Assembly (NCBI GenBank): GCA_002269645.1
Contig: NIVC01000510.1
Coordinates: 1-64,000 of the forward strand
Direction: 5' to 3'
Length of the DNA: 64,000 nucleotides
Origin: Macrostomum lignano
Taxonomy: Eukaryota
The notes beneath the pieces were generated by a model that was given only the letters and a program-made list of their open reading frames with translations, had not been told where the DNA came from and did not search any database. This document shows positions 12,638 through 63,700 of the stretch, one piece after another (positions within the stretch are counted from its first letter, which is position 1; every line of letters begins with the position of its first letter). The position numbers were made by a program, and so were the translations under genes.

Positions 12638-12691
<54 letters not shown>

Positions 12692-12800: not shown

Positions 12801-12831
<31 letters not shown>

Positions 12832-12840
12832 TAGATAGAC

Positions 12841-12883
<43 letters not shown>

Positions 12884-12954
12884 CAGACAGATAGATAGAT
12901 AGATAGATAGATAGATGGATAGATAGATAGATGGATAGATAGATAGATAGATAC

Positions 12955-13032
<78 letters not shown>

Positions 13033-13049
13033 GGATAGATAGATAGATG

Positions 13050-13085
<36 letters not shown>

Positions 13086-27740: not shown

Positions 27741-28097
27741 GGGGCCGCGTGCACCCCGGCGCACTTAAAGCGACATTGTCACACAACCGGCGAGAGGCAT
27801 TACTGCTCATTCTGCCGACTCCCTGAGCAGGCACACAAGCGCGTGGATACGTACGCAGTCATACGCACAGGCACACACTCACACAGGAGTGTACAGCGGC
27901 CCTAACTTTATTTATCGTTAGGCATGTACACTTCACTGTGCCTTAGGGGTTGGCTCTCAAGGGCGTTAATTGCACGAGCAGAGCCAAGCCGAGATTCCAA
28001 TTTAGCCCCCCCCCCCAAATTAATGGGACTGCACTTGGAATCGAGCCTGGGCCACTGGCACATCAGAGCGCCCCGCTAGACCACTGGGCTACATCCC
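27741..28097 (-). mobile_element. tRNA-derived SINE, family B (most complete copy)
   Basis: Minus-strand head GATGTAGCCCAGTGG...GGCTCGATTCC (A/B boxes). Body shared with 9051, 47505, 51425 and 63330. Confidence 0.7.
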
Positions 28098-41147: not shown

Positions 41148-41458
41148 ATAAATAATAATCATTGATTACACCTGCTCTAATTGCGGCAGATGTGCAACCG
41201 ACAGCTCAGCCGCAGCTATTGCGCGGCCCATCTGAAGGCTGCGTACGGCTGTTCAGTCCAAGGACTTGGGGGTTGCCACAAACACAGCCTCAATTACCCC
41301 AGCTAATGCTGGCACCCATTTTACAGCTGAGTGAACTGAAGCAATGTAGAGTCAAGCGTCTTGCTCAGAGGACACAAATTGTTCCGAGTGGGGTCGAGAA
41401 TCGAACCCCCGACCTTTAAGTCGTGAGTCCGACGCTCTGACCACTAGGCTACAACCCC
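41148..41458 (-). mobile_element. tRNA-derived SINE family A, full length
   Basis: High similarity to 6957-7262 over its whole length. Confidence 0.88.
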
Positions 41459-41542: not shown

Positions 41543-44500
41543 CTATTGTTTCTTCTTTCCCTTTGTCTCGTCCGGTCCCGCTTGGCTAGCAATCCTCGCC
41601 GTCGTCCTCGAGTCCCACACTGCGATGTAGCCATCGTGACTGCGAGCGGCGCTCAGAAACCACCGACCAGGCGATGGCGGCGCGGTCAGACACTCCACAA
41701 CGTCGGCGTGGCCGTGCAGCGAAAGCAGCTGTCGGGCCTCGCAACACTGGCTGTCGGCTTTCCCAAAGCCGAATTCAACTAGAAAGATGTAGCCCTCTTT
41801 GCAGCCAACTAGTAGCATAGATTTCTTAGCTGAAGCTTTGTTGCTAGGGTCTTTAGAATCTTCCGGCACGGTTAGCTGGCACAGCGAGCCAATGCCTCGA
41901 CAGCGGCCAGTCTCCGACGGGCACTGTAGCTTTAGTCGGCTAGCCGGCTCTCGAACTGTTAGAGCCGGTTTGTTGCTAGGGCCAAGCTCCGTAGGGTAGA
42001 AACGTAGTTCACCAACTCTATCAGAGGCTGCCACCAGCACTAGGCAGTGGTCTTGAGTGGTTAAAGCTAACAATCGATCGCATTCAAAATGGCCACCGGA
42101 TTCTAAGCTGACCAAGAGTTGAGGCTTGTGACTGGCATTTAGGCTGAAGATTGCTCTGGAAATCAATGGTAGTAGGTGTAGACGAATCATATCAGTAGTG
42201 CCTTGACTAGAGCAATGTACATTTAAGGGGTAGAAGTATTTGTCTAGGGCCTCGTGGCTGGAGGATTGGAGCAGTTGGGCTACAGCGAGTGTACATTAGG
42301 GGGGGGGGGTAGAAATATTTGTCTAGGGCCGCGTGGCTGGAGGATTGGAGCAGTTGGGCTATAGCGAGTGTACATTGGGGGGGGGGAATATTTGCCTAGG
42401 GCCACGTAGCTGGAGGATTAGAGCAGTTGGGCTAGAGCGAGTGTACATTAGGGGGGTAGAAATATTTGTCTAGGGCCGCGTGGCTGGAGGACTAAAAATT
42501 TTTAGGAGTTGGGCCATATATGGACTTTTAATCTACTTAGTAAGTAGTAGTATTTAGGCAAGCAATTCTAATCGTCCAAACCTGCGACTGCAGAACAGCA
42601 GCAACGGTTTGACTACTTCGCTCATATCGCATCCGCCTGCACATTGGTGGGCAGCGGTGATCGGACTCAAGCACACTGGCCTGACACCCGGTCCGCAGTC
42701 TACTCGTCTTAGCAGCTTTCTTTGAGCAGTGTGCCAGACTAAAATTTCGGCTGGCTGCTTGTCGGCGATGCTGAATCCGCTGCTGATTGAGTAGCAGTGA
42801 TTGTTAACTTCTACCATGCTCAGCACCGGATGTCGGTGACCAATCAAGCGCTCCTCGGTTGAATGAGTACGATGGGCGGTGCAGATCACAGTCAGCTGAC
42901 TGCCGCTCTGGTGATGGTAGGTGGCCAACCAGAAGTGCGACGGCTCGCTGCTTACCTGAGAAGACGGAAATTAGAGTAAACATTTGTAGTAGGTGAAATG
43001 GTAGACAGAATAGATGAGACAGTAGACAGGGTAGTACAAGAAACGGTAGACAGAATGCTAGGCAAGTTAAAATGGTAGATAAGATAGTAGATAAGACGGT
43101 AGACAGGGTAGATGAGACGGTAGACAGGGTAGATGAGACGGTAGACAGGGTAGTTGAGACGGTAGGCAGGGTAGATGAGACGGTAGGCAGGGTAGGTGAG
43201 ACAGTAGGCAAAGCACAAGTAGACACAGACCTGCATCGCGCAGTGAATCCTGCCTGGCGGACTGGCTACAACACAATCGATTTGTCCAGCCTCAACATCC
43301 ACAATAGCCAATTTGGACATGGTGCTGGTGTTGAATGCGCAATAGATAGGTTCTGGGTAGCTGTACTGAGCAGCATTGCTCATTGGAAACAGGCCAACAA
43401 TGGTGACCTTCTCTGATTCGCCAAAAGCCGGATTAAACTTGCTAACCAGACTGTCATAGGTGCTAGCGGGCAGGCTGCAATCGTAGCGGCCCTTGCTAAA
43501 GTACAGAAAACAGTCCATGAGCTGTTTGTCAGCCCGGTGAAACTGGCTACCCTCCACTGAAGCCAGTGCCAGGAGGGTGTCAATAATGAGGGCATTCTCG
43601 CAAGCCTTGTGCAGTATGGTTCTGTCCTTGGCTATGCGATATGCTCTCACGGCCGCCAGATATTCTTCTAGCACAGTGTACCATGCCGGCAGATCACCCT
43701 TCAGCCATATGGTGTGGCTGCTGTTGTGCTGGTGCGCGGACTGGTGACGGTCCAGGGACTTGCTGAAAAATGGTTGCAGGGGCGCTTAATGCAACTGGGA
43801 CTGACCTGGAGGGTGTTTAAAGCAACTGGAATTGGCCTAAAGGGTGTTTAAAGCAACTGGAATTGGCCTAAAGGGTGTTTAAAGCAACTGGAATTGGCCT
43901 AAAGGGTGTTTAAAGCAACTGGAATTGGCCTAAAGGGTGTTTAAAGCAACTGGAATTGGCCTAAAGGGTGTTTAATGCAACTGGAATTGGCCTAAAGGGT
44001 GTTTAAAGCAACTGGAATTGGCCTAAAGGGTGTTTAAAGCAACTGGAATTGGCCTAAAGGGTGTTTAAAGCAACTGGAATTGGCCTAAAGGGTGTTTAAA
44101 GCAACTGGAATTGGCCTAAAGGGTGTTTAAAGCAACTGGAATTGGCCTAAAGGGTGTTTAATGCAACTGGAATTGGCCTAAAGGGTGTTTAATGCAACTG
44201 GGACTGACCTGGAGGGTGTTTAATGCAACTGGGACTGACCTGGAGGGTGTTTAATGCAACTGGGACTGACCTGGAGGGTGTTTATTGCAACTGGGTTTGA
44301 CCTACATGTCGAGGGTGTTTAATGCAACTAGGACTGACCCAGAGGGTTTTTAATGCAACTGGAATTGACCTAGAGGGGATTTATTACAACTGGAATTGAC
44401 CTAGAGGGTGTTTAATGCAACTGGAATTGACCTAGAGGGGGTTTAATGCAACTGGAATTGACCTAGAGGGGGTTTAATGCAACTGGAATTGACCTCGAGG

Positions 44501-47500
44501 GTGTTTAATGCAACTGAGACTGACCTAGAGGGTGCTTATTGCAACTGAAATTGACAGATGGTGCTTATTGCAACTGAAATTGACATAGAGGGTGTTTAAT
44601 GCAACTAGAATTGACCTAGAGGGTGTTTAATACAACTGGGACTGACCTAGTGGGTGTTTAATGCAACTGGAATTGACCTAGAGAGGTTTATTACAACTGG
44701 AATTGACCTAGAAGGGGTTTATTACAATTGGAATTGACCTAGAGGGTGTTTATTGCAACTGGGACTGACCCAGAGGGTTTTTAATGCAACTGGAATTGAC
44801 ATAGAGGGGGTTTGATGCAACTGGGACTGACCTGGAGGGTGTTTATTGCAACTGGGTTTGACCTAGAGGGTGTTTAATGCAACTGGAATTGCTTTGATGG
44901 GGTTTATTACAACTGGAATTGGCCTTAAGGGTGTTTAAAGCAACTGGAATTGGCCTAAAGGGTGTTTCATGCAGCTAGAATTGGCCTAGAGGGGTTTTAT
45001 TACAACTGGGACTGACCTGGTGGGTGTTTAATGCAATTGGAATTGACCTAGAGGGTTTTTAATGCAACTGGAATTGACCTAGAGGGTGTTTATTACAACT
45101 GGGACTGGCCTGGAAGGTGTTTAATGCAACTCGGGTTGAGCTGTAGGGAGTCAGAAACCTGAGGTAAACAAACCTCTCCGCAGGCCCAGCCGGCATGGAG
45201 TTCTCCACTGTTATCCTCATCGACGCGTACCCTGAGGCCAGCCGCCAGAGCATCCGAGTTGGTCGTTCAACTTTGGACACCTGGTCCAGATTGGCCAGGC
45301 ATACAAAGGGGGAGCCGCTGTGGCCTTGCGGACTGCGCAGGTAGAGTCTCTTGTCGGTGAGGATGAGGTGACCGGCGCCCAGCTTCTCCACGTGCACCAG
45401 ACTGCCGGCTTTGAGAACGATCTGAATTATTGGATAGTGGGGGCATGAGCTAGTTAGTGCTGTGCTAGCTTTGCTTAGGGATGTGAGAGGCTGGCCCAGC
45501 AACTGAGGATCTGGGAGCCTGGCTCAGCAACTGAGGATCTGAGAGGCTGGCTCAGCAACTGAGGATCTGGGAGGCTGGCTCAGCAACTGAGGATCTGGGA
45601 GCCTGGCTCAGCAACTGAGGACCTGGGAGGCTGGCACAGCAACTGAGGATCTGGGAGGCTGGCTCAGCAACTGAGGATCTGGGAGGCTGGCTCAGCAACT
45701 GAGGATCTGGGAGACTGGCTCAGCAACTGAGGATCTGGGAGACTGGCTCAGCAACTGAGGATCTGGGAGGCTGGCCCAGCAACTGAGGATCTGGGAGGCT
45801 GGCCCAGCAACTGAGGATCTTGGAGGCTCGCTTAGCAACTGACACTCTGAGAGGCTGGCCAAGCAACTGACACTCTGAGAGGCTGGCCAAGCAACTGAGT
45901 ATCTGGGAGGCTGGCCCAGCAACTGAGGATCTGCGAAGCTGTCACAGGAACCGAGCTTTTGGTTGTAGAAAAACGGAAGTTTGATATTCGATCTTAAGCT
46001 TGTTACAGTGGAGTCAGCAACAGACTCACCGCGCCATCCTCGGGCGCATCAACGTCCAGCAGGCCGCGCACCCGGCTGCTCCACATTTCGTAGAAAGCGT
46101 CGAACACTCCCGGATCGACGCCGAATTTCTCCTCCGGCATCAGCAGCTGGTCGCCGTCCTCGTCTTCGATGTTGATGTCAACGTTGGCAGCAGTGCCGGT
46201 GACGGCAGACTGGTCCAGCGAAAGCAGCAACAGGGTGTTGAACAGCCTCCGCTGGAGTTCCTCGTCGAAGCTGATGCCCAGATTGGCCAGACACTCGCCG
46301 AAGCTCGTCTTGCTGATGCAGCGAGTTGGCAGCTGAATTTGGCGACTAATCCTTCGCCGATCTTTTAAAGCTTCGTCGCCGGATTCAATTGTGTCGACGA
46401 CGTCTCCGCCTGCTACGGCGGCGGCTGCAGCTGCGGCTGCCACAGCGGCCGTCATGATCGACGCCGGCTGCTCGAAGCTGTCCTCGGCGTCCAAATCGAA
46501 GTTGCCACCGCTAGCTGAATGAACGAACTGGCGCAGCTGGTCTAGCTCCTCTTTCAATGCCTGACGCTCGGCATCTGATAGGCCGCGCATAATCTCGCGA
46601 ACTGCCGGCTGGTTCACCAGGCGACTGTCCAGTCTGTAGCACTCGTGACAGTCGCGCAGAGCTGGCACGTTCTGACCAGTGGCCAAGTGGTACATGCTGC
46701 GCAGGTAGTGAATCGCCACGCGCCTGGGTGCAAATTAAAAAGGTTAGAAAGGTGCAGCTTTGAGATGGTGTACCTTTGAGATGGTGTATCTTTGAGATGG
46801 TGCAGCTTTGAGATGGTGTAGCTCTGAGTTGGTGTACTTTTGAGATGGTGCAGCTAAGCTAGAAGTGTTTCAGACCTGCTTCTCTCGGCTCCATCCAGCT
46901 GCCTGCCCAGCATGTCGATGCAGCGCTGATAGAATCCGTCTCCGCCAGCCTCCTTGGGGAAGTACTCCGGCAGCTGCAGGTAGTCCGGATTGCGCTGACT
47001 CGGCTCCAGCTCCGGCACTCGTGGCATGGACATCAGCGCGGTCGACTGACGCTTTTTAGTCTGTGCGTAGCTCTGCTTCCGGTTGCTGCGAGCCTGCCGA
47101 TCCCAGGCGTCCTCCCGGTTGTCGAGCCGGTCGTGCAGGAACGCGTCAAACATGGTGCCGTTGACAACCATTTCGTAGAATGACCGATCGGCATTGGGCA
47201 GCGAGTTCAAATAGCCGTCCTTGTTGAAGAAGCGAGCCTCCTCTTTGATGAACTGGGTCACTGTGCCGAATAACTCGACCATAAGCTGAAGGAAAGTGTT
47301 CAGCAGCAGGTGCCGATTTTCCATGTTGAACTGAGTCTTCTGCTTGTTGAAGTCCTCGATGGACAGAGCATCGGGCTTGGATAGAATGACCCAGTCAAAG
47401 TTCAGCTTCTTCAGCCTCGGCGATAACTGATCTTTTAATCGACGCAGCACATCCCTGTTAATTAGGGGGGGTAATAACCGGATGCTTAGGCATATTATGA

Positions 47501-48887
47501 AAAGGCCATAGTGCAACGCCTTCGGCGACATCGTCCCACAGCCAGCGTCACCCAGGGTGTACAGCGGCCCTGACTTTCGTTGTCAAGCATGTACACTCTC
47601 TACGCCTTGGGGTTGACCCTCGTGGTTGCGAATCGCACAAATTCCCTAATCTCGATTCGCGATGAACGACGGCTGACTAAAAGAAACATACAAAACACAA
47701 TCTGGACTCGCACCTGGGCATCGATGGCACCAGTTCGGCCGGTTCTGTCAGGTACACCTTGCCAGAGTCCAAGTCTCCAACCACTAGCCCGGCAGTTTCG
47801 TTCACTTCGTCGCGACAGTTGGAATGACAGCCAAAAAAGAATGGCTGAGGCGCGCCGAGGAACTCCACGCTCGGTATGTTGGACATGTACGGCAGGTTCC
47901 AGCGCATCGGATAGAGCAGCAGCAGCAGCGACTCCATCACCAGAGCGATCAGTGACGCGTCGGAGCTTGTCACCACGATGCGCTGATCGGTGAGCAGCGC
48001 CGACAACAACAGTAGAATATCGTCCAATGGCAGACTGCGAAACAGTACCGTGACGTCAAAGTCAACCACTAGGCCTATGCGAGGCATCGGCGGCAGTAGG
48101 TTCAGCGTGACGCCAAATAGTTCAGACTGGATGCCCAGACAGGTGTCTGATGGAGGCGGCACAGGGGTGCTGCACAGAGCGATGGTGGCCGACATTATGA
48201 TAGAGTTGAAGTTGTGCGGATCCTCTTGGCTGACACGGGACAGAATGGCTGACAGCGAGGTTTTTAGTACGGAGAAATAGGGCAGTTTGGAGACCAGGAT
48301 GACGGTTGAGGGCACGTAGACAATCTGAAATTGAAATTGACGCTACCCTGAGAACCTGGATTAGGTATTGAGCGAAGGATTCACCCCATGAAGACGGTAA
48401 CTAGGCAAAGAAACGTACCAAAGTCACTTACGTCGCCCCAGAGTCGTTGCAGGTAACAGGTAAAATAGGAAAGAAGTGACTCTATACGACTCTAAAACGA
48501 CGAGATTTCACGTTACAAATCGCCAAAAAGCCGGCAAAGAGTGGTCTAAGAGTCAATTTGAGGCGCTTTATTGACTGAGACTCTGCAACGGTTCCGGGGC
48601 GCTTCTATAACAACCCTGGAGCCGTAAAGTCGTATCTGAGGCCTGCCAGAGCCGCTGTATATTCACTGAGTTGCGTCAAAAGCGCATCTAGAATCTAGAA
48701 TTACCCCGATTGGCAAAGCTTCGGCCAATTATTCAGCCGCGTCGGCCGCTAAGTCTGTCGGCCGGCCGCATCTGTTGCGAACTCCCGCAGCTCACGCTGG
48801 CGGATCCGCTTTTAAAAAGCCGACTCCGGTAATCCCCTGGTGTAGTGGTAGTAGTAGTGGTAGTAGTAGTGGTAGTAGTAGTGGTAT

Positions 48888-48922: not shown

Positions 48923-51270
48923 AGTAGTTGTAGTGATATTGGTAGAGGTAGTAGTATAAGTAGTAGTTGTTGTAGTAGTATTGGTAGTAGTAGTAGTAGT
49001 AGTAGTAGTAATAGTGGTACTTCTAGTACTAGTAGTGGTCGTGGTCGGGGTGGTAGTAGTAGTATTAGTAATATAGTCGTGTATCAACACTAGCATTCTT
49101 TGTCGTTGTGGTCGTAGTAGCTTTTATAGTAGTGCTTTGTGTGGTTTAAATCGTAGCTTTCTACTAACAGTAGTAAATAGCACCGCTTTTGTTTGTTGTG
49201 CACGCATTTAAGCACTGCTTTTGATGGTATCCTGTCTGTCCGCTTTCCCGCACACTTATTCAAAATTTTTCGTTTGTCACGCTACGCTCGTCGAATCGCA
49301 TTTCGCATTTATTACAACTCTATTTAGTCGAGTGAATTCAGTAGAAAGGTAAGCGCTAACACAATGACTCCTGGACGACTTTTTCGGAACGCTTCTACAA
49401 CTCATGTGATGCGCTGATGACTCAACAGTCGCCTCTCCATCGCATTACAGTCGATTGAGTCGTTTAAAAGTCACAAGAGTAGCCTAGTGAGTTATTTGCA
49501 ATGTCTCTTTAGCGATTCTTGTCACGGTAACGTTTTCAACGGGATTTGCGGCAGAGCCAAAATTCAGGCTTAAAAACCTATATCCGGGCTACCCAATGAT
49601 GTTAAACAAGCGCACCTCATCATTCAGTCCATCCACGTCATCGTCTCGACAGTCTTCCTCTAAGCGAAGCTGCACCAAGCTGTCATCGTCTGCATCCTCT
49701 TCGGCGTCCTCATCGCTGTTGGGGCCAGCATTAGCCAGGCTGGGTTGCCGTCTGGCGCGGTACTGCCGACCGAATGTCAGCAGGGTGGCGTAGAGTCGGT
49801 CGCCAGATATGTGCGTCAACACATGATAATCGATCCTCGCTTCCAAGGGGCGGGCACTGATCTGCAGATGGGAGGTGAAAACTTAGTTATCTAAAGCACG
49901 GTGACCAATTCAAGACACGGTGACCAATTCAAGACACGGTGACCAATTCAAGACATAGTGACCAATTCAAGACACGGTGACCAATTTAAGACAGGGTGAC
50001 AAATTCAAGACAGGGTGACCAATTCAAGACATAGTGACCAATTCAAGACACGGTGACCAATTTAAGACAGGGTGACAAATTCAAGACAGGGTGACCAATT
50101 CAAGACACGGTGACCAATTTAAGACAGGGTGACAAATTCAAGACAGGGTGACCAATTCAAGACACGGTGACCAATTCAAGACACAGTGACCAATTCAAGA
50201 CACTGACCAATTCAAGACACTGACCAATTCAAGACACAGTGACCAATTCAAGACACTGACCAATTCAAGACACTGACCAATTCAAGACACTGACCAATTC
50301 AAGACACTGACCAATTCAAGACACTGACCAATTCAAGACACTGACCAATTCAAGACACTGACCAATTCAAGACACTGACCAATTCAAGACACTGACCAAT
50401 TCAAGACACTGACCAATTCAAGACACTGACCAATTCAAGACACTGACCAATTCAAGACACGGTGACCAATTCAAGACACGGTGACCAATTCAAGACACGG
50501 TGACCAATTCAAGACACTGACCAATTCAAGACACTGACCAATTCAAGACACGGTGACCAATTCAAGACACTGACCAATTCAAGACACTGACCAATTCAAG
50601 ACACTGACCAATTCAAGACACGGTGACCAATTCAAGACACGGTGACCAATTCAAGACACGGTGACCAATTCAAGACACGGTGACCAATTCAAGACAGGGT
50701 GACAAATTCAAGACTTTGTGACCAAATACAAGACAAAAAGCGAGATAATTCTAGACATACGGCATCGATGGGCATTGGAGAACAGTAGAATTCAAAACAC
50801 ACAAACGCACCATTATGCTTAAAAGTACAAACCTGCAAGCCTTCCGGGTAGCAGAGATCCGGCAGTCCTTCCGCCACCTCGCCAGCCACCTTCTTCTCGT
50901 GCTTTGTCACCGCAATGTTGCGCACAGACGACATTCGTCTACCGTCGGCTCCGCCAACACCAGACAGGCCGCCGCCGATGCCGCCGCCGCCGACGCTGCT
51001 ACCGGTGAGCGTTGGTCGTCGACGCATCAGTCGAGCCAGAGTCTGCTGCTGCTGGTCCTCGTCAGACATCAGCGACTTAACAACGTCAGCATTCGCTCGG
51101 GCAAAGCTCGGCCGACGAGCCTGCCTACTAGATGCCGCCGAGATTGACTGCCGCGGCGAAGACGACGGAAGCAGGGACTGGACGATGCCCAGGCGACGAC
51201 CCCCACGGCCGCCACCACCGCCGCCGCCGCTGCTGCTGCCGCCTCCGACACCAAGGCTCGCTAAATAAGG
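41543..51270 (-). CDS. DENND3: DENND3-like Rab GEF (uDENN-cDENN-dDENN, PH-like, WD40); normal-polarity exons 51270-50833, 49861-49616, 48324-47714, 47454-46876, 46723-46030, 45421-45174, 43762-43231, 42955-42582, 42206-41543
   Basis: LPDLCYPEG, HVLTHISGDRLYATLLTF, ILVSKLPYF, LLTDQRIVVTSSD, LYPMRW, APQPFFFG, FLQLMVELFG, TMFDAFL, GHLILTDKRL, WD40 LHGHADVVECL/IAVWD. All junctions GT-AG and in phase. The first two exons lie in the complemented block. Confidence 0.88.
42225..42500. repeat. ~75-bp tandem repeat, about 3.5 units, DENND3 intron
   Basis: GTCTAGGGCC..GTGGCTGGAGGATTGGAGCAGTTGGGCT repeated. Confidence 0.85.
43790..45125. repeat. 31-bp minisatellite (AAAGCAACTGGAATTGGCCTAAAGGGTGTTT), ~1.3 kb
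   Basis: Seen directly; homogeneous core and diverged flanks. Confidence 0.93.
45480..45936. repeat. 28-bp minisatellite, same family as 1655-2160
   Basis: CAGCAACTGAGGATCTGGGAGGCTGGC units; same terminal GAGGATCTGCGA. Confidence 0.92.
47505..47640 (-). mobile_element. Family B SINE fragment in DENND3 intron
   Basis: AGGGTGTACAGCGGCCC...GCATGTACACT...CCTTGGGGTT shared. Confidence 0.65.
48840..49075. repeat. (TAG)n microsatellite
   Basis: Seen directly. Confidence 0.92.
49895..50720. repeat. 18/20-bp minisatellite (TGACCAATTCAAGACAC[GG])
   Basis: Seen directly. Confidence 0.95.
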
Positions 51271-51424
51271 CTGCTCGAAGGATTAGAGCGAGCCGCAGTA
51301 AATTCGCAATGAATATAAACGTTGCTTCTATCAAAAAACGGAACTAGGGCTTAGCTGAGTTTCTGAGAAATCAAAGACGACATCGACCCGAAGGCAGCAA
51401 GGAAGAAAGCAATCGTGCCCGTTG

Positions 51425-51620
51425 AGCGAACCCACGAGCACGCAGCGGATACGTACACAGGTACACACTCGCATAGGGGTGTACAGCGGCCCGACTTGCT
51501 AATCGTCAGGCATGTACACTCTCTGTGCCTTGGGGTGTAGGCTCTTATGGGTTGGATGTAAATCGTGCGACAACCGGTGGAGGGTCCCGGTTCAAGCCAC
51601 GTGTTTGTTCAGGGTTTAAT
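51425..51620 (-). mobile_element. Family B SINE fragment spanning the left edge of the complemented block
   Basis: Normal polarity matches the family to ~51551. From ~51564 only the complement matches (GCACG..., GGCCAAGTTCGGTGCACAAA vs 9230 GGCCAAGCTTCGCGCACCAAA). Confidence 0.6.
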
Positions 51621-51718
51621 TAAGGGGGGTTGGGAGGAGTCCGGTTATAGAAGGACTAATAGAAGGACTTCAAATTCATCGATTTTTAGTTAATACTTTT
51701 TCGAGAGAAAGTAGAGTG

Positions 51719-51890
51719 GCCGCGGAGCGACAGAAGAAGGAGAAGTAGGAGGAGGAGATAGTACCACCCTCAGACCCGTCCGCCGACGACTACGACGACG
51801 AGTTGGTCGGCTGGGACCCGCTCCCTCGCTCTCCGGGAGCTCGGGCGCACCTTTCGACCGTCACCCATCTTGCCTCGGTGACCGCCCACC
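51719..51890. other. DENND3: DENND3 exon 2, readable only by reading the + text right-to-left without complementing
   Basis: TTTACAG| 172 nt |GTGAGA; (N)HPPVAPFYPLPAFHAG...MIEEEDEEEEDSEAP; phase 2 in, phase 0 out. Confidence 0.85.
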
Positions 51891-52461
51891 GACATTTAAC
51901 TAATCTTTCTCTTTGTTAACGAAAGAAATTATCTGTTGGAGCAACTGTTATCCTGTTGACGTACATTCAATCTCCCGTCAACCTTTAAAACGCTTAAAGT
52001 TCACTACCGGCCAAAAGTAACATCAATACACAAAGCAGGCTCGATAACAACAAAGTTATAATTATTATTATTAACTAATATGGATGTGTTTATCTGTCTA
52101 CACGTTGGCTGTCGAGTCGGCGTCGATAACGCGCCGCGTAGACTTCCGACGCATGCCGACAAGTCAGGTTCCTGACCCCCAGCGGTGCGTGGGAGTTAAT
52201 GGGCTCGATCACGACCGTGGGTAAAATGGCGACCCACTTGACTTCGTTACGTCTCAATTCACAGAACGAGGTCCTGTGTTTAACAAGACTCACCCAGCTC
52301 TTAGCTTGGGGCTGGAAAATCAGCACTCAGGCTGCGAGATTGGTGATCCGATGTTGGATGTTGGGGGACAAAAGTTCGATAACTGTTAATCCTTCAAGTC
52401 TTAATAATTTCGACTGCTAGTTATTAGATACCTTTTCGTGCGATTTCTGTGTTTATGATTG

Positions 52462-52652
52462 AACAACCCTTTTTGGCGGAATCTAAGCAACTGTCAACGA
52501 TCCTTTGTTCCGAGCATCCGCTACGACCAGTCGTCGAACAAACCTGGCGACGGTCGCGGCGGCGGACCGGCTCCGGCCTCTGACGACGACAGTAGCCGCG
52601 GTTGATGCTGTTCATGAAGATTCTCTGCTAAGAAATCTATTTTCGGTCTGTA
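52462..52652. other. DENND3: DENND3 exon 1 with start codon, readable only right-to-left
   Basis: MSGFYLKNRLLEVLVVVGADD...LLTSIAYEPCFLATVNESKAVFPN then AA|GTTAGT. RLLEVLVVVG is the typical N-terminal strand of DENN proteins. Confidence 0.88.
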
Positions 52653-53696
52653 ACGTTAATCATTATTGACGACGATAGTTACTTAAAGAAAATTGACGAA
52701 GACGTTTTCTCCCCCAACTTGAGATAAATAATCAAAACTCAATTTCAAAGTTTTTTACGTATAGTAACTTAATTTACTTTAACTTTAATACGAAAAGAAG
52801 AAGAAGAAGAGTACACGTTATCAATATAACAGCCACTGATTCATTTTAACAAAGGATTGAACTGGTATCACTAAAGTTAATAGTACCATCGCATCGCAAA
52901 TCATCTTTTGATTAACTATTAAATAGGTTAACCAACTTCTTTTTATCTCGACAATCCCATTTACACTATTCATCCGACAGACATTTTTTATCTTATTTTA
53001 TGACGTTAAAAATAACATTGAGGAAAGAGATTAGATTATCCTTGTATTAAATACATGGTGAGCATATAGTAAAATACTTTAAATCCCACTGACTTTTAAT
53101 ACCGATAGATTTTTGACCGTCAAACTAGCTATTTGATCAATCTGACTAATTTGAACTCTATGTTGTTGTTTCTTTAAGTTTTATACAGTATAAACCACAT
53201 ACTCACGATCGTCTTATTTCATTTTTTATAATCACTAAATCTTTTTTTGGGTCTTTATTTGACAGACTTAAGAAACATAGAGTGTAGGTATAAACATTGT
53301 CATAAACTTTGTTGTTAAGAGATGACTCAGTCATAACCGACTGTCATGGCGCGCACTACGATTAGGCGTCACGCCTAATTCAGCTTTAAATTAACTGAAT
53401 TTATTAATCTGTTTTTTAGATTTCGGTATGAGGATGGTTTACGTAAAAAATAATCAGCAATGTGCTCATGTAAATTGTAAAATTATTTTTTAATATAAAT
53501 TTATTTATCTATTTATGTTATTTGCGTTTTTGTAGACGAAGTCGTTTCGAAAAATTTTTATCAGAAACAAAATGACATTGACAATCTTTTCAAGATATAC
53601 GTTGTTGTTAAAGTTTTTTGCAAGAGGAAAAATGACTGAAAAGTATCTAGCTATCATCACACTCAAATAATCACAAATTTCATAAAACATAGCGTC

Positions 53697-53723
53697 AACC
53701 TTGGACCTTCGTCGGATTTTTAC
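53697..53723. other. EEF2: Candidate ATG-only first coding exon of eEF2, readable in the plain complement
   Basis: Complement reads TCGCAG|TTGGAACCTGGAAGCAGCCTAAAAATG|GTAAGC. eEF2 exon 2 starts TTTAG|GTG AAC TTC and lacks an ATG. Confidence 0.55.
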
Positions 53724-54439
53724 CATTCGAGGACAAAAAAGACGATGATAATCGATTTAATAAAACGTCATAACGACATAAAAATGACCATTACGTATTA
53801 AGACCGACAAAGCGGGGTTTGATTTGGTAAGGACGGTTCCTGTAGAAAGGAAAAATCTGGCAAAGCGGGTATTTATTACAAATCTTTAAAAAAAACGTTA
53901 ATCCAGATCATTAAAAGCAGATGAATTGATCCGGATACCGATACGTAGAAAATAAAGCTTCTAAACCATAGATTGATTTCTTCTAAATCTTCATAGTTAG
54001 TTTCTAAATCACAGATTCCTTTCCTGGTAAAACTTTAAACGCGAACGTTGTTATTTCCTGGAAAAAACGTTGACAACGCTGTTAAGTTCCTGAAAACGAC
54101 AACGCGTGTCTAAGGTTTGTTACGGTTTAAATGTAACGTTTTTAGATAGTGTAGTTCAATTTAACGTAAATCTTTGACGTGTAAAAGATTTAAAAGGTTT
54201 TTACAAGAAATCAATTTGTTTTTGAAAGATATTGTAGAAACTTATTAGTTTTTATAATTATCCATGATTGTTTAAAATTTTGAAATATAAACCTTTTCAT
54301 GATAATGATAACATTTATTTTTACCTTAAAAAATTTGAGAGTAACAACAATTACAATCCGGATGTTACACGTACATCAAAACATTTTCTTTTTAATATCA
54401 TCACCCACACGGTTTTCAAAGAGTTCGAATTTTACCACG

Positions 54440-55161
54440 GGGGATAACCTTATTCAACTGTTTTACACCTACTGGTAGGCAGTGTAAAAACCTAAGAGGA
54501 CCACAGCGTAACACGTTGTCACCATAGTTCACCACACAGTACAACGCGTTGTAACCTTTGGTCTACAGCAGTACGTAACGTGTTACGTTGCGTTGTCACA
54601 CCGTTGAACCACAGACCGTAGTACACAGCGCAACGCCGGATCTATACATCGGTTTTGGAGTATTTGACACAAAGTAACATTATACAAATACAACAAAGAA
54701 CCATAAATTTACAAAATTTGTACAAACTATTATTGATCAAGAACTTAACAAGAAAAAATAAAACTGCCATTTCATTGATTATGAAGTTTATATTAAAAAT
54801 CTTTACAATGAACAATCAATGTTACGTACGTGACAAAAGATTCACAACATGGAAACAACAAAATGACAAATAACAAAAATTTAAAGTAAAGAAAAAGACG
54901 TTTTAACTTTCCTTATGAAAACAGAGAGTGAGGTACCAGAACCACAACCCTCACTTACCGTTTTGTCTTTAACAGTTAACGTTGCACCGACGATACCACA
55001 GGAGGGGGAGGGGGACCAATAAGCCAACAGTCACAACGCAACGTGCAACGTAGCGGTGGGGGGATCAGTTGTTTTAAACCACAGCGCAGTACGAAAACTT
55101 CCGTGTTAAAACCGTGGGTACAACGTACAGGCGTCCAAAAACTTTGAATAAGGTTATCCCC
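54440..55161. mobile_element. 722-bp MITE inside the complemented block, 18-bp TIR, 6-bp flanking direct repeat
   Basis: As given: GGGGATAACCTTATTCAA ... TTGAATAAGGTTATCCCC flanked by ACCACG on both sides. Confidence 0.7.
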
Positions 55162-55699
55162 ACCACGGGGTTTCACCATGGGATTATACGGTTTGAGAAG
55201 TTACCATACAACCTTTTAAGACCACATGTACATTGGAACTCACATCCATACGGTTTTCATCCGTACGTGTCAACCGCACGTAGTGAGGACTCTTTAATCA
55301 TACGTACGTGTGGACCGTATGTTGAATATCTTAGAACACTTTCTCAATCATTTTTTTCTTATTCACTTTTTTTATTTTTAGTAAAATTCATTTTTTATAA
55401 TTCGAAAGATCAAAAAAGTTCGAACATAATTCCGTAAATTTGTTTATAAACGTATATAGTTAAAAAACGATATTTATTATATCCCCTTTTTCGTTTTTTT
55501 AGTTGGTTTATTAATCGGTTTTCACAAGAAGTGCGTTGGGTTTTTTCCAGTAAATAACAACGTTAAGATCGTATTTAAATTCTCACACTCACATATGAGT
55601 TTTAAAAAACACACGTGGGCGGACCGACAGTATTAGACCAAAAGTAGGTTTCGTTGTAGGGCTTAAAGTAGACCATACATTATGTTTACAGAGTAAATT

Positions 55700-56070
55700 T
55701 TTGGCCTACTCTCGGCCTACTTTTCAAATGTTTGGTCTACTTTTGTACGTATAAACTGGAAAGTAGACCCACAAGTTGGTTGTAATCAGGCCTTTAAGTA
55801 GGTCCTTCGATAGACCTTTCGACGTCTCTTGTCCCGCCTCGTTTAACACCTCGTTTAGACCTGCTTTACATACGTACGGAGGTGGCCTACTCTTTGGCCT
55901 GTTTTAAGGTCTACTTACGGCCTAGTTTACATACGTGTGGAGGTGGTCTACTTTGACCTACTTTAAGGCCTACTTACGGTCTAGTTTACATACGTGTACA
56001 GATGGCCTACTCTTTGACCTGTTTTAAGGTCTAGTTTACATACGTGTTCAGATGGCCTACCCTTTCGTCT
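55700..56070. repeat. Degenerate tandem repeats (complement: CCGGATGAGAAACCGGACAAAATTCCAGATG), related sequence at ~58030-58400
   Basis: Recurrent GGCCTACT/GACCTACT units as given. Confidence 0.65.
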
Positions 56071-56235
56071 ATTGTACAATTTCTTGATTCATTCCAACTG
56101 TTGTTCTGCTTTAGAAAACTTTTACATTCTCTTGTTTAACGACCTTTGTGGAGTTTCTTTCGTTCCATATAACGTGAACGTGTCTCCCACCGGTTGGAAA
56201 TTAAGTGAAACGATCTATCTCATCACCTTCGACTT

Positions 56236-56615
56236 ATATAACTTTGGCTTCTATGTACGCGTTATCAGCCGACTGGCTAAACCGCCGGTTGGTTACATTC
56301 AGTGTTTTTACGGGTGGGCTTATTTATGTTTTCATCATGATTCATCTACTGTTCCGTAAAAAGGAATTATTCTCTCAGTATCAATGAGAACGACAATTGG
56401 GTTTCAACGTAACCAAAAAAACATGGCTTATAACTTTGGCTTGTATGTACGCGTTATCAGCCGGCTGGCTAAACCGCCGGTTGGTTACATTCAGCGTTTT
56501 TACGGGTGGGTTTATTTATGTTTTCATCATGATTCATCTACTGTTCCGTAAAAAGAAATTATTCTGTCAGTATCAATGAGAACGGCAATTGGGTTTCAAC
56601 GCAACCAAAAAAATG
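56236..56615. repeat. Direct tandem duplication of a ~190-bp unit
   Basis: TTATAACTTTGGCTT...AACCAAAAAAA occurs twice; explains twin ORFs 56205 and 56397. Confidence 0.85.
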
Positions 56616-59600
56616 TACATTCAGCGTAAAAACCGGTTTTTTGGTACAGCGTAAAAACAATTTTGATTCAACGTGTCGGCTGGTTTAAAACCTTCAACGC
56701 GTACATACTTTGGTTTCTATTAACAATTTCAACGTACAGCGATTTTTACGTTTATGTGTTCTGTACGAACTCAGTTTTTATCTTACCGTTTTGGAGTATA
56801 ACCCACCTGTTTAGTCCTCTTTACCTCTTACTCTACTGTGTGATAGAAAATCCGCCGATGTTTAATCATGATCCGTCTTTTTGATCTTTAAAGTGTCTTC
56901 TTTTTGAAGGTCGATGTGCTTCTTTATCCGCGTCTTTTTTTTGAGTGAATATTTTAACCCCTGTTGTCTTTTTTATCGCTGTATATGTAAAAAGGTATGA
57001 TCCTCACTTTGTTTTACAGTTGTCTTTTGATCTTTACATCTGGGTTCCAACTATAATGGATAGACGTCTTGTCACTAATAACATGTGCAATCATTACAAT
57101 TCATTTCAATGACAAGATTTTATGGGTGGTACCACATATCTAACGTCCGTTATCCATGTAGCACGTATAAGTCGTACAGAAACAAGGAAGTTGACTATTA
57201 TATTATATGAGGGAAGAAAAAGTAATAACACAGAAACTAGACTAACGACCTGACTATTCTTTCTATGTGATATCTGTTGATTTGTATTAATCAATAACTT
57301 AGTGTTTCGTATTCGTTATTTGAAACCTTTTAAGGTAATTTGTATCCGGTTTCCGTTGTATCTGTTGTCACATAAATTTAACTTTAATCCTATTGTATAC
57401 CGTGTTTTAATGATGCCGAAAACGGTGTTTTACATACCGAAAATATGGTAGAAATCACTATGTCGAGATATTAAGTTATGAATGTTCATGAAGTGTTAAA
57501 TACAGTGAGTGTCACACTGGTCGTTGTTTTTACACTCTTTATTGGGTCGATCTTTCTTTTTTGTGTCATCGATGAATTTACTTCTTTTTCACTTTTTGTA
57601 AGTGATATCGTTAAAACGGTTACGAATAAATAACAGACTTATCTTTAAGAACAAAATTAAGTAAGGTCGATTAAGTTCGTCGTGTAAAAGTAAAATTTAG
57701 TTATAGTAGTAGTTAGTATGTAACATCCCTATCTAACTCTGCCATAATGGGATAAACAGATCCGATCACCGGAAGGAACGATAACGGTCAAGGAAAGGTG
57801 GGTTCATCTTTTATATTTTTGTGTTCTTTTTCGATTTAACCCGACAAATAAATTCAAATTGTGTCTTTTTTCTACTGAAGAATTTTTTGTGTTATTGTGT
57901 CGATAAAATTTTTTCGTGTCTTTTTGTGTTTATTGTGTCGTCACCAGTGTAACCAGTGAGTAATGTATAAAGAAATGGATTATTGTTGAGTTACGTCAGA
58001 ACGTTTAATGAATGAGTATTTTTTAGGTTCAGGGGAAAGGCTTGAGTCATAAAGTAGACCTGAAGAAGGTAAAACACGTAACCAGAAATAGACCGAAAAC
58101 CACCCAGTTACCTGTCCTACATTTTGGCCTGTTTTAAGGCCTGGTTCTATACGAAAGAAGGTCAAAAGTAGACCAAAAGTTAGACCGACTAACAATCTCA
58201 AATTAGCTGTTCAGTTGCCTAGTTTTTGACCTACTTTTCTCAGTGTTTCTCTTGAGAAAGTAGGCCGAAATGAGGCCTAAAACCGGGTCAAAAACCAGGT
58301 CTTTGTTTTTGACCTAGTTTTGGCCTAGTTGTAGAAAAACCAGGCTTTTGTGGGGGGATTTTGCCCAATTTGGCCTGCTCCGGTCTACTTTTGGTCTAAT
58401 GCTGTCGGTCCGCCCGTAAATATTAAGTTAAAAACAAGTCCATACGTGGAACGTACTAGATCTGATACAATATACTCAACTATTAAAAAATACACTATCC
58501 TCCGTTTCTTTCTTAAAAACATGTTTTAGGTTCTACGTAAGACATACATAACGTTTTTTGAACGTACGTATAAAAACTATTTGAACACATATGTATAATC
58601 TGTTTGAACACGTGAACTCAGTAACGATTTTTGAACTTCATACTAAAGTAAAATTTTCCAACATATAATGTGAACATGGTTACGACCCTAACCAACCCTG
58701 TTTAGTTTGAACCAGGTTACACGATAGAATTGTTAGAGATATACGGTTCGATATATGGTTTTTCCGTGTAATCCGGGAAAACATGTGGTTCAACATACGG
58801 TTACCACATGAGGTCCAGAAAACATACAACCTTAAAGACCGTATATATATTTGATAGATTTGAGACCGTGAACATTGTACATTTTGTCTAAAATAACGTA
58901 CATTTTCGTTAACCGAAACCCGTTTTTATATAAAATAACAGTTTTACTGTTTGGTATTTTCCAGGAAATAACAATGTTGAAATTCTTCAGAAATTCATAA
59001 CGTTATATTCTTTATAAACGTGTACAATTACATATTTGTAAGAAATTTTTTCATGTGTTAAAATTCAAGATTTAATCGGTACGTTTCTAAGATAGGATCT
59101 GGTTTTAATGAAATATCTTATATAAATATCTGTATTATTTTTAGTGTTCCGCAGTAGCCATAGCTACGGGATCCTATGGCAATTACGGTAAAATAGGTGC
59201 CTACAGCAGCTACAGATACGCCTACAGTAGCTAGCTGCTCTTATGGCTACAAATACGGAAATATGGTAGTTGTTGTCAGATTCTGTAGATTGCCATAGCC
59301 ATAGTTACTGTTTAAAAATTGAAAAAATATTAGAAACAGGTAGAATAAAACAAATATACTTTTAGTAAACTGTATTATCAACTTTGAAACTTTTAAAATA
59401 TACCTAATAAAGTACAAACAAACACTAGCAAATTCTATTTTTTTATGTGAAAAAGTTCAGCATTAGTACTTTCATTAACAATTTAGTATTGTCGCTCTGA
59501 AAAATAGATAAAATATAATCTTACGAAGTCAATCAAGTGTTTCTTTTATTTTGTAACTTAATTTGCAGTTTTTTAAGCACTAGGTTATCTTATTGATTCA

Positions 59601-60767: not shown

Positions 60768-63700
60768 GTGAACTTCACTGTTAATCAAATCCGTGGCATG
60801 ATGGACAACAAGCGGAACATCCGCAACATGTCTGTCATTGCTCACGTGGACCACGGCAAGTCGACCCTGACCGACTCTCTTCTCTCCAAGGCTGGCATTA
60901 TCGCCTCGGCCAGAGCTGGCGAGACCAGGTTCACCGACACGCGCAAGGACGAGCAGGAGCGCTGCATTACCATCAAGTCTACGGCTGTTAGCATGTACTA
61001 CGAGCTGACTGAGGCCGATGTGAAGTTTGTCAAGACCCTGCAGGAGGTGTCCAAGCGCAGCGATGGAACGGACGAGTCCGGCTTTCTGATCAACCTGATC
61101 GACTCGCCTGGCCACGTGGACTTCAGCTCTGAGGTAAGTTGTTGTCAGGTGACCTTTTGGACAACAAATAGAGGAGAGTCTCCTGTACACAAAGCCACTA
61201 TTCGACTAATTTGTACAAGTAAATGACCTTATTTGAACTCTTAGTTCAACACAATTACCTGCACATAGGTGTTGTAGCCTAGTGTTCAAAGCGTCGGACT
61301 CACGACTTAAAGGTCGGGGGTTCGATTCCCGTTTCCACTGGAAACAATTTGTGTCCTTGAGCAAGACACTTAACTCTGCATTGCTTCAGTTCACCCAGCT
61401 GAAAAATTATTAATTATTATTGTTACCTGCACATGATGACCTTATACTGCCCCAGGCTGAAAAATATTTTTATTGAGGATTCAGTTCTCTGATGCAGGTG
61501 AAGTTTTCTGTTTTTTTTGCGGTAGTCTTGAAGAGAATATTGTTTTAGTAATCGGCTATTATTATTGCCTAATTATGACGAACAGGTGACCGCCGCTCTG
61601 CGCGTCACCGACGGCGCCCTTGTCGTCGTGGACTGCAACTCTGGCGTGTGCGTGCAGACGGAGACGGTGCTTCGGCAGGCCATCGCCGAGCGCATCAAGC
61701 CGGTGCTGTTCATGAACAAGATGGACTGCTCGCTGCTGACGCTCAAGAAGGGCAAGGAGGATCTGTACCAGCAGTTCCAGCGAGTCGTTGAGAACATCAA
61801 CGTGATCATCGCCCAGTTCGGCGAGGAGGGCGGCCCGATGGGCAACATCTTCGTGTCGCCGGAGAAGGGCACCGTCGGCTTCGGCTCGGGCCTGCACGCT
61901 TGGGCCTTCACGCTGAAGCAGTTCGCCGAGATCTACGCCTCCAAGTTCAAGATCGAGCCGGAGAAGCTGATGAAGCGTCTGTGGGGCGACAACTTCTACA
62001 ACACTGAGACGAGGAAATGGGTGAAGACTCAGGAGAGCGACAAGTGCGTTCGCGGCTTCATCCAGTTTGTGCTGAACCCAATCTACCAGGTAAGATATTG
62101 ATGCGTTTTTTTAGTCGCCTGTTGGTTTATCAGCTCATGCGTGATGACCTTATACTGCCCCAGGCTAATGCAATCAATTAAATGCTGCAATTGATGATTC
62201 AGTTTGTCTGACCAGAGCTGTAAACCAGTCAGCGCTTTTATCTATAACATCTAAAAAGTATTTTTTACCTGCACATGATGACCTTATACTGCCCCAGGCT
62301 GAAAATATCTTATTGAGGATTCAGTTCTCTGATGCAGGTGGAAGACTTTTGTTTTTATTGTCACATTTATTTCTCAGCATTGTCCTTGCTATATACTGTA
62401 CCATCGATTGTACATTCACCGATTCATTCTACAGATGTTTGACGTTGTGATGGACCAGCCGATCGAGGAGGGCCTGAAGCTTGCCGAAAAGCTCAACATC
62501 AAGCTGGACGCTGAGGAGCGCGAGCTGACCGGCAAACAGCTGCTTAAAGTGATGATGCGCAAGTGGCTCCCAGCTGGCGACACTCTGCTGCAGATGATTG
62601 CCATCCACCTGCCGTCTCCCGTGACCTCCCAGCGCTACCGCATGGAGCTGCTGTACGAGGGACCCCACGATGACGAGGCCGCCATCGGCATCAAGACCTG
62701 CGATCCGAAAGCGCCGCTCATGATGTACATCTCGAAGATGGTGCCGACCTCCGACAAGGGTCGATTCTACGCCTTCGGTCGGGTGTTCTCCGGAGTTGTG
62801 AGCGCCACCAAGGTGCGAATCATGGGCCCCAACTTCGCGCCGGGCAAGAAAGACGACCTGTTTGAGAAGAGCATCCAGCGCACCATCCTCATGATGGGCC
62901 GCTACACCGAGCCTATCGAGGACGTGCCGTGTGGCAACATCTGCGGCCTGGTTGGCGTCGACCAGTTCCTGGTGAAGACCGGCACCATCACCACCTACGC
63001 CGCTGCGCACAACATGCGCGTCATGAAGTTCAGCGTGTCGCCTGTCGTTCGCGTCGCCGTTGACTGCAAGAATCCGTCCGACCTGCCGAAGCTGGTCGAG
63101 GGTCTGAAGCGCCTGGCCAAGTCCGACCCCATGGTGCAGATCTACAATGAGGAGTCTGGCGAGCACATCATCGCTGGAGCCGGCGAGCTGCATCTGGAGA
63201 TCTGTCTGAAGGATCTGGAGGAGGATCACGCCCAGATCCCCATTAAGACTGGCGATCCCGTGGTGTCGTACCGCGAGACTGTTACCAACGAGAGCAACCA
63301 GGTTTGTTATTTACTTTGCTAGAGTCAGAGAGGCTGCGTGCATCCTGGCGCACTTTAAGTGGCATTGTCGGGCAAACCGGCGAGAGGCATTACTGTCCAT
63401 TATCGCTTGGCATGTACACTTCAGTGTGCTTTTGTGGTTAGCCCTTAAAACGACGTTAATTGCTCAAGCAGACCCAGGTGTGTTATCCTTTAATTAGCAA
63501 TAGGAGTTTCCCTAGCACCAGAGTCCTCAGACTAGAAGCCTGTCTTCACCGTCTGACAATGAGATCAGAGACCAGTAACCTAGAAAGGCACAGTGCATAG
63601 AGTACTATTTGGCCAATTTCACAATCCGGTTGTTGATACTGAATTACAATATTACACTGCAGACGGTGCTGTCCAAGTCGCCCAACAAGCACAACCGGCT

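What the first reader, a model, noticed from the sequence alone, without database searches (positions are those of the whole stretch)
51719..52652. The missing 5' end of DENND3 is hidden in the mirror block and splices in frame
Backwards reading gives ATG at 52652, a 191-nt exon (MSGFYLKNRLLEVLVVVG...AYEPCFL...FPN, phase 2), then a 172-nt exon 51890-51719 (phase 2 in, phase 0 out). That joins the normal-polarity acceptor CTCTAATCCTTCGAGCAG| at 51270 into the frame continuing to LPDLCYPEG. Three matching phases plus the DENN N-terminal strand are very unlikely by chance. They also show the block kept its left-right order (complement only).
Basis: seen in the sequence. Interest (0 to 1): 0.8.

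Follow-up and report, generated by a model that had tools for sequence, protein, structure and literature searches.

The report
Gene's first exons inside a complemented block
The first two exons of a flatworm DENND3-like gene are really there and already annotated, but they read backwards because 7,558 bases of this window were written as their complement without being reversed, which is a data artefact and not biology.

Summary
The result is ordinary biology seen through a corrupted stretch of sequence.

- **Exons.** Reading the + strand backwards gives exon 1 (52652->52462, ATG, 191 nt, GT donor) and exon 2 (51890->51719, 172 nt, AG acceptor, GT donor). They join the normal minus-strand exon 3 at 51270 in frame.
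- **Match to known proteins.** The assembled 349 N-terminal residues are 100% identical to two Macrostomum lignano UniProt proteins, A0A1I8J4X2 and A0A1I8JB43.
- **Family conservation.** A profile of the N-termini of 19 DENND3-like proteins from the representative search (the Macrostomum hit left out) scores the backward frame at 36.8 bits. The other 11 readings score nothing, and the best of 1000 shuffles scores 5.2 bits.
- **The block.** Against GenBank contig NIVC01003335.1, window 51576-59133 is the base-by-base complement, in place and colinear, at 99.855% identity. Both flanks match normally. Undoing the complement gives one 10.3-kb alignment at 99.864%.
- **Cause.** No rearrangement of double-stranded DNA produces a complement without reversal, and the block has diverged no more than its flanks. 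This is a strand-handling error or a deliberate edit.
Pfam uDENN shows no score gain from exons 1-2, but its 57-position model does not cover the N-terminal strand, so the test is uninformative.

Interest is low.

The parts
51576..59133 (.). Complement-only ('mirror') block of 7,558 bp. Every base is the complement of the reference base at the same position, with the order unchanged.
   Evidence: As it stands, the block has no BLAST match to L001. Once complemented, it matches L001 9494-1934 at 99.855%. The junctions are exact to the base, and the restored window gives a single 10,327-bp alignment at 99.864%. K-mer polarity change points independently fall at about 51418-51554 and 59091-59191.
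52462..52652 (-). Exon 1 of the DENND3-like gene (191 nt, ATG at 52652). It is readable only by reading the + strand backwards. It encodes the conserved N-terminal strand of the uDENN/longin region.
   Evidence: The same 191 nt lie on the + strand of L001 at 8418-8608.
51891..52461 (-). Intron 1 (571 nt; GTTAGT...TTTACAG in the backward reading). It contains a SINE-like repeat at 52059-52357.
   Evidence: The repeat matches copies at 41148-41456, 6960-7261 and 61271-61407 only when it is reversed without complementing (89%, E about 1e-108).
51719..51890 (-). Exon 2 (172 nt, phase 2 in and phase 0 out), readable only backwards. It encodes a low-complexity linker.
51271..51718 (-). Intron 2 (448 nt). 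Its first 143 nt in transcript order (51718->51576) lie inside the block, and the rest is in normal polarity.
   Evidence: The GTGAGA donor is in the backward reading and the CGAGCAG acceptor is in the normal minus-strand reading. A repeat at 51440-51551 is in normal polarity. The junction is at 51575|51576.
50833..51270 (-). Exon 3 (438 nt, normal polarity). It holds a low-complexity linker, the internal Met used by GenBank PAA51916.1 (51069), and the start of the Pfam uDENN match (LPDLCYPEG).
49616..49861 (-). Exon 4, which holds the rest of the Pfam uDENN match (YHVLTHISGDRLYATLLTF).
47714..48324 (-). Exon 5, the DENN domain.
   Evidence: Pfam DENN at 9.1e-28. It is 100% identical to P0001 residues 350-552.
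46876..47454 (-). Exon 6, the dDENN domain.
46030..46723 (-). Exon 7, the TPR_DENND3 repeats.
41546..45421 (-). Remaining 3' exons (PH-like and WD40 region). The limits are approximate and come from tblastn.
   Evidence: tblastn of P0151 against the window. A weak WD40 hit appears.
52653..59133 (.). 5' flank and AT-rich intergenic spacer (6,481 nt) that lies inside the block. It runs toward a divergently oriented EF2-like gene whose annotated CDS starts at about 60774 (+).
   Evidence: No convincing ORF appears in any of the 12 readings. GC is about 0.29-0.36. The gene table for L001 is, and the EF2 homology is.

Best explanation
The window is Macrostomum lignano genomic DNA. It carries a DENND3-like gene on the minus strand with the domain order uDENN-DENN-dDENN-TPR-WD40, which by homology is a predicted Rab guanine-nucleotide exchange factor.

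Window bases 51576-59133 have been replaced by their base-wise complement without reversal. This happened in silico, after sequencing.

The block covers the gene's promoter side, exon 1 (start codon and the conserved N-terminal strand), intron 1, exon 2 and the first 143 nt of intron 2. Within the block the written + strand is the mRNA-sense strand spelled 3'->5', so these exons appear only when the text is read backwards, and they then splice in frame to normal exon 3. The gene itself is intact and ordinary, and its 5' end is already in public protein sets.

Shown here: the exon structure, the identity to known proteins, the family conservation of exon 1, and the exact limits and nature of the block.

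Inferred: that the cause is a strand-handling error or a deliberate edit, such as 'complement' applied where nothing or 'reverse complement' was meant. It is also inferred that the protein acts as a Rab GEF.
For: - Backward reading gives the ATG, two ORF-compatible exons and canonical GT/AG sites, and it joins exon 3 in frame.
- Exons 1-4 translate to 349 residues identical to P0001 (UniRef100_A0A1I8J4X2) and P0152 (A0A1I8JB43), both from M. lignano.
- P0152 also carries all 5 testable window-specific peptides. It was therefore predicted from the same gene copy in an assembly where these exons had normal polarity.
- The family N-terminal profile scores only the backward frame: 36.8 bits, nothing for the other 11 readings, and a maximum of 5.2 bits for shuffles.
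- Codon usage fits only the claimed frames.
- Reference contig NIVC01003335.1 (L001): left flank 100%, complemented block 99.855% and colinear, right flank 99.845%, and the restored window gives one alignment at 99.864%.
- A SINE-like repeat inside the block matches its normal copies only when reversed without complementing.
- K-mer polarity likelihood flips only across this block.
- Pfam domains: DENN 93.6 bits, dDENN 30, TPR_DENND3 38.5.
Against: - I could not retrieve the record the window itself was cut from. I therefore cannot say whether the complemented block sits in a deposited assembly or was introduced when the window was prepared.
- No transcript data were available, so the exon 1-2-3 junctions rest on gene predictions, conservation and splice signals.
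- GenBank PAA51916.1 models the paralogous or allelic copy from an internal Met in exon 3.
- Pfam uDENN shows no score gain from exons 1-2, although that model does not cover the region.
Confidence: 0.93

Rival explanations
1. The complemented block is an error already present in a deposited public assembly or record of M. lignano, and was not introduced when this window was produced. In this reading the biology is the same and only the origin of the artefact differs.
For: The window is not identical to the one public contig I could fetch. Identity is 96.6-98.3% across the gene body and about 99.85% near the block, so it comes from another contig, haplotype or assembly that I could not inspect.
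Against: - P0152, which shares the window-specific residues, was predicted with exons 1-2 in normal polarity.
- Assemblers orient sequence by reverse-complementing. An internal complement-only segment with base-exact, feature-less junctions is not a usual assembly error.
Confidence: 0.12
2. The gene really starts at the internal Met in exon 3 (window 51069), as in GenBank PAA51916.1. The backward-read exons would then not be part of the mature mRNA.
For: PAA51916.1 (P0151) begins with MSDEDQQQ at L001 10001, which corresponds to window 51069. Pfam uDENN needs only exons 3-4.
Against: - Exon 1 encodes the N-terminal strand that is conserved at the very N-terminus of the 19 DENND3-like relatives examined.
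- Two independent UniProt models include exons 1-2.
- Splice sites are canonical and codon usage is coding in the correct frame.
- A protein that starts at the internal Met would lack the first strand of the uDENN/longin fold.
Confidence: 0.04
3. The block reflects a genuine chromosomal rearrangement (an inversion) or some physically real 'mirror' DNA.
For: The block has sharp boundaries and its strand relation to the flanks is altered.
Against: - An inversion gives the reverse complement and flips the internal order. As written, the block has no match to the reference on either strand (BLAST searches both), and it matches only after complementing in place, with the order kept.
- From established knowledge, template-directed synthesis and ligation of antiparallel duplex DNA cannot generate a complement without reversal.
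- Divergence from the reference inside the block (99.855%) equals that of the flank (99.845%). The ORFs, splice sites and SINE copy are undecayed.
Confidence: 0.005
4. The backward ORFs and splice-like signals are a coincidence.
For: With free choice among many GT and AG dinucleotides, an in-frame path can often be found. The 'three matching phases' argument alone is therefore weak.
Against: The 121 residues from exons 1-2 are 100% identical to public proteins. The family profile gives 36.8 bits against 5.2 bits or less for shuffles. The codon-usage scores also argue against chance.
Confidence: 0.001

Closest known systems
UniProt A0A1I8JB43 and A0A1I8J4X2 ('UDENN domain-containing protein', Macrostomum lignano)
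   Same: Their N-terminal 349 residues are identical to the product of backward-read exons 1-2 plus normal exons 3-4. A0A1I8JB43 also shares the window-specific substitutions.
   Different: A0A1I8J4X2 differs from the window at several positions downstream. The six that fall within its length are the same six seen in PAA51916.1. A0A1I8JB43 has an out-of-frame stretch inside the DENN exon (LAVHVQHTERGV...) and a shorter C-terminus. Both were predicted from sequence in normal polarity.
GenBank PAA51916.1 (hypothetical protein BOX15_Mlig009796g1) on NIVC01003335.1, assembly GCA_002269645.1
   Same: It is the same gene family copy or paralogue. Its locus is colinear with the window at 96.6-100% identity, and it supplies the normal-polarity reference for the block.
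   Different: The model starts at the internal Met of exon 3 and lacks the 188 N-terminal residues, although exon 1 is present upstream at L001 8418-8608 and the reference is colinear across the exon 2 region.
DENND3 family (in vertebrates a Rab12 exchange factor; that function is from my own knowledge and was not tested here)
   Same: It has DENN, dDENN, TPR_DENND3 and a weak C-terminal WD40 hit. The N-terminal motif xLLEvxVVVGxD and the following FEPxVLAxxS...FP segment are shared with 19 relatives.
   Different: Identity in the DENN exon to the nearest non-Macrostomum relatives is only 33-37%. A linker of roughly 190 residues, much of it low-complexity and encoded by exons 2-3, separates the N-terminal strand from the LPxxCYPEG motif. 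Its activity and Rab partner are unknown.
Chromosomal inversion or a mis-oriented contig in an assembly
   Same: It is a discrete block with sharp ends whose strand relation to its flanks is wrong.
   Different: An inversion or mis-orientation is a reverse complement with flipped internal order, and ordinary two-strand searches can detect it. This block is complemented only, keeps its order, and is invisible to BLAST as written.

Membership tests
DENND3-like DENN-domain proteins | Central DENN domain (PF02141) | tested here: met
   93.6-97.9 bits against a cut-off of 23.4. It also matches the DENND1A/1B structures at about 1e-11.
DENND3-like DENN-domain proteins | dDENN domain (PF03455) | tested here: met
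   30-33.8 bits against a cut-off of 26.8.
DENND3-like DENN-domain proteins | uDENN domain (PF03456) | tested here: inconclusive
   Scores range from 19 to 25.1 bits against a cut-off of 22.3, depending on the construct. The match covers only exons 3-4, at profile positions 7/14-57.
DENND3-like DENN-domain proteins | DENND3-specific TPR repeats (PF25570) | tested here: met
   31.4-38.5 bits against a cut-off of 27.
DENND3-like DENN-domain proteins | Conserved N-terminal strand at the very N-terminus (xLxExxxVVGxDxxTGL...) | tested here: met
   A profile built from 19 relatives scores backward-read exon 1 at 36.8 bits. No other reading scores, and shuffles reach 5.2 bits at most.
DENND3-like DENN-domain proteins | C-terminal WD40 region | tested here: inconclusive
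   There is one WD40 repeat at 21.5 bits, below the cut-off of 27. The relatives have long C-terminal regions of similar size.
DENND3-like DENN-domain proteins | Rab GEF activity (Rab12 in vertebrates) | not testable with these tools
   This needs a biochemical nucleotide-exchange assay.
Genuine genomic inversion | The block equals the reverse complement of the reference segment, with internal order flipped | tested here: not met
   As written, the block has no hit on either strand of L001. It matches only after in-place complementing and is colinear.
In-silico complement-only artefact | Every base in a contiguous block is the complement of the reference base at the same position, the flanks are unchanged, and the block has no extra divergence | tested here: met
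   The junction display shows the switch from identical to complemented exactly at 51575|51576, and back at 59133|59134. Identity is 99.855% inside the block, against 100% and 99.845% in the flanks.

The most novel reading that the evidence does not exclude
The most novel reading that my evidence does not exclude is that the 7.6-kb complement-only block sits in a deposited M. lignano assembly. There it would silently hide the promoter and first two exons of this gene from every standard two-strand search and gene predictor. That would suggest similar blocks may exist elsewhere and could be found with a k-mer polarity scan like the one used here. The reading that the organism's DNA physically carries a 'mirror' segment is, for practical purposes, excluded.
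Probability: 0.1. Interest if true: 0.25.

Novelty: already known. Interest (0 to 1): 0.08.

Why it matters
Biologically it matters little. The gene, its first two exons and its protein are already in public databases, and nothing about their structure is unusual.

The practical value is for data quality.

- A complement-only block is invisible to BLAST, gene finders and ORF tools, because they consider only the two legitimate strands. Here it would make a conserved gene look 5'-truncated and promoter-less.
- The block should be complemented back (51576-59133) before the window is used.
- If it comes from a public record, that record needs correcting.

A minor annotation point also follows. 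GenBank PAA51916.1 is probably 188 residues too short at its N-terminus.

Tried and rejected
- **The search for homologous proteins, DENND3 queries.** The assembled N-terminus and a concatenate of conserved exons both returned no hits, although identical proteins are in the collection. The tool's word index missed them. In the EF2 search every hit was about 506 aa or shorter. These negatives carry no weight.
It showed no gain: 21.3 bits with exons 1-2, 22.8 bits without, and 25.1 bits with the linker removed. I rejected it as uninformative, because the 57-position model matched only exons 3-4 and does not reach the N-terminal strand.
- **PDB sequence search.** It hit only the DENN core of DENND1A/1B and said nothing about the N-terminus.
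- **Spliced or backward-read proteins.** I therefore ran no structure prediction of the uDENN fold.
- **Finding the window's own source contig.** Look-ups of P0001 and P0152 were not on record. The EF2 neighbour search returned no M. lignano proteins.
- **Locating the block ends by composition alone.** This gave only about +/-100 bp. An attempt to use the SINE-like repeat at 51440-51551 narrowed the left edge to 51552-51718. Both were superseded by the reference alignment.
- **A second mirror block at 11.2-13.2 kb.** The weak negative polarity score there is a 1.7-kb (GATA)n microsatellite, which reads the same when reversed.
- **ARAGORN and Rfam.** Neither found anything in the window or in L001.

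Full report
**Observation.** Reading the + strand backwards (reversed, not complemented) from 52652 gives ATG and a 191-nt open stretch, MSGFYLKNRLLEVLVVVGADD...AVFPN plus two bases. It is followed by a GTTAGT donor. The stretch 51890->51719 is 172 nt, preceded by ...TTTACAG and followed by GTGAGA. The two exons total 363 nt, so exon 2 ends in phase 0. It joins the normal minus-strand acceptor CTCTAATCCTTCGAGCAG| at 51270 and continues in frame to LPDLCYPEGLQ|GTTTGT at 50833.

**Is it more than chance?** Matching phases alone are weak evidence, because many GT and AG sites are available. Three independent tests are strong.

- Codon-usage log-odds, trained on the gene's normal-polarity exons, are +15.1 for exon 1 and +19.7 for exon 2 in the claimed frames. 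Every other frame of the backward reading is negative, and the three other readings of the same DNA reach at most +10.1 and carry stops in nearly all frames.
- An exhaustive HMMER search with the normal-polarity DENN exon found P0001 at 100% identity, with that exon at residues 350-552. This is exactly where my model places it if the backward exons are included. P0001 and P0152 begin with the very sequence assembled here, and all 349 residues of exons 1-4 are identical.
- I built a profile from the first 95 residues of 19 DENND3-like proteins, excluding the Macrostomum ones. It scores the backward frame at 36.8 bits (LKNRLLEVLVVVGADDSSSLRP...YEPCFLATVNESKAVFPN against the consensus lhnsLiElclvvGmDedTglkp...fepqvLaalsanvavfpq). 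None of the other 11 readings of the region scores, and the best of 1000 shuffles reaches 5.2 bits.

**Organism and gene.** The cluster look-up names the proteins as Macrostomum lignano UDENN domain-containing proteins: UniRef100_A0A1I8J4X2, A0A1I8JB43 and GenBank PAA51916.1. The reconstructed 1565-residue product has DENN (93.6 bits), dDENN (30), TPR_DENND3 (38.5), a weak WD40 repeat and a borderline uDENN hit. This is the DENND3-like architecture. Exons 3-7 lie on the minus strand at 51270-50833, 49861-49616, 48324-47714, 47454-46876 and 46723-46030. Further exons run down to about 41546.

**The mirror block.**

- A strand-symmetric k-mer model scores the window as more likely forwards than reversed everywhere except about 51.5-59.2 kb, plus a weak dip at 11.2-13.2 kb.
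- A SINE-like repeat at 52059-52357 matches its copies at 41148-41456, 6960-7261 and 61271-61407 only when it is reversed without complementing (89% identity, E about 1e-108).
- The decisive evidence is the public locus L001, which is NIVC01003335.1:46433-76487 in assembly GCA_002269645.1 and was fetched through PAA51916.1. Window 50740-51575 matches it at 100%. Window 51576-59133 has no match as written, but its base-wise complement matches L001 9494-1934 at 99.855% and is colinear. Window 59134-61066 matches at 99.845%.
- The base-level display shows the switch from 'identical' to 'complement' exactly between 51575 and 51576, and back between 59133 and 59134.
- Complementing the block in place turns the three pieces into one 10,327-bp alignment at 99.864%.

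**What it is.** An inversion or a mis-oriented contig would be a reverse complement and would still match the reference in a two-strand search. This block does not. As a matter of established knowledge, no replication, repair or recombination process acting on antiparallel duplex DNA yields a complement without reversal. The block is no more diverged from the reference than its flanks, and its ORFs, splice sites and repeat copy are intact. The change therefore happened to the text, not to the DNA. Either a strand-handling error or a deliberate edit is responsible.

P0152 carries all five testable window-specific peptides and includes exons 1-2. So the same gene copy has been seen in normal polarity in a public annotation. 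I could not fetch the window's own source record, so where the artefact arose stays open. M. lignano is described as a neopolyploid with duplicated subgenomes (PMC10733133), and the Mlig_3_7 assembly is described in PMC5730564. Both fit the window being a near-identical second copy or haplotype of L001.

**Contents of the block.** In transcript order it holds the following:

- 6,481 nt of AT-rich 5' flank and intergenic spacer (59133->52653), running toward a divergent EF2-like gene whose CDS starts at about 60774
- exon 1
- intron 1, with the SINE-like repeat
- exon 2
- the first 143 nt of intron 2

No other convincing ORF appears in any of the 12 readings of the block.

Pfam uDENN gives 21.3 bits with exons 1-2, 22.8 bits without them, and 25.1 bits when the linker is removed. 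Formally this is 'no gain'. The model has 57 positions and aligns only from the LPDLCYPEG motif onward, so it cannot register the N-terminal strand. The family-specific profile is the appropriate version of the test, and it is clearly positive. The other refutation criterion was transcripts that start elsewhere. It is met only by a prediction, PAA51916.1, which starts at the internal Met at window 51069. Given the conservation of exon 1, that model is more likely truncated than correct.

**Verdict.** The finding describes an already annotated, ordinary gene 5' end seen through a file-level complement-only artefact. It is not new biology. Its value is as a data-quality flag.

Noticed in passing
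window 51069 (L001 10001): GenBank PAA51916.1 starts at an internal Met in exon 3 (MSDEDQQQ). It omits the 188 N-terminal residues, including the family-conserved first strand, although exon 1 is present upstream on its own contig (L001 8418-8608) and that contig is colinear with the window across the exon 2 region. The model is probably truncated.
   Followed up: partly
window about 47603-48055 (-), inside the DENN exon: UniProt A0A1I8JB43 (P0152) contains an out-of-frame stretch (LAVHVQHTERGVPRRASAILFW...) that equals another reading frame of the DENN exon. In the window the exon is intact and in frame, so that public model seems to carry a frameshift or a spurious splice.
   Followed up: partly
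window 11408-13149 and 8355-8991: There is a 1.7-kb (GATA)n microsatellite and a 0.6-kb (AGAC)n microsatellite. Such repeats are nearly unchanged by reversal. They produce a weak false 'mirror' signal in the k-mer scan and large compositional skews.
   Followed up: yes
window 6960-7261, 41148-41456, 52059-52357, 61271-61407: A roughly 300-bp SINE-like repeat family appears, with about 89-90% identity between copies and what looks by eye like a tRNA-like head. ARAGORN and Rfam do not call it. A second, different repeat occurs at 27853-27963, 47555-47613 and 51440-51551.
   Followed up: partly
window 50002-50714 (intron 3 of the DENND3-like gene): A minisatellite reported with a 19-bp period (17-nt consensus, about 40 copies) lies here. 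The window and NIVC01003335.1 align less cleanly across it (96.7% with many alternative alignments), and the DENND3 introns at 43-46 kb hold similar arrays.
   Followed up: no
window about 60774-64000 (+): An elongation factor 2-like gene lies head-to-head with the DENND3-like gene. The ORF at 62408-63322 is 78% identical to EF2 proteins of other animals. The gene runs off the right end of the window.
   Followed up: partly
window 28360-29109 (-) and 5177-5821 (-): An apparently single-exon 249-aa ORF has a signal-peptide-like start and many cysteines. A separate ORF carries a Walker A-like motif (GGSGSGKST). Neither was examined.
   Followed up: no
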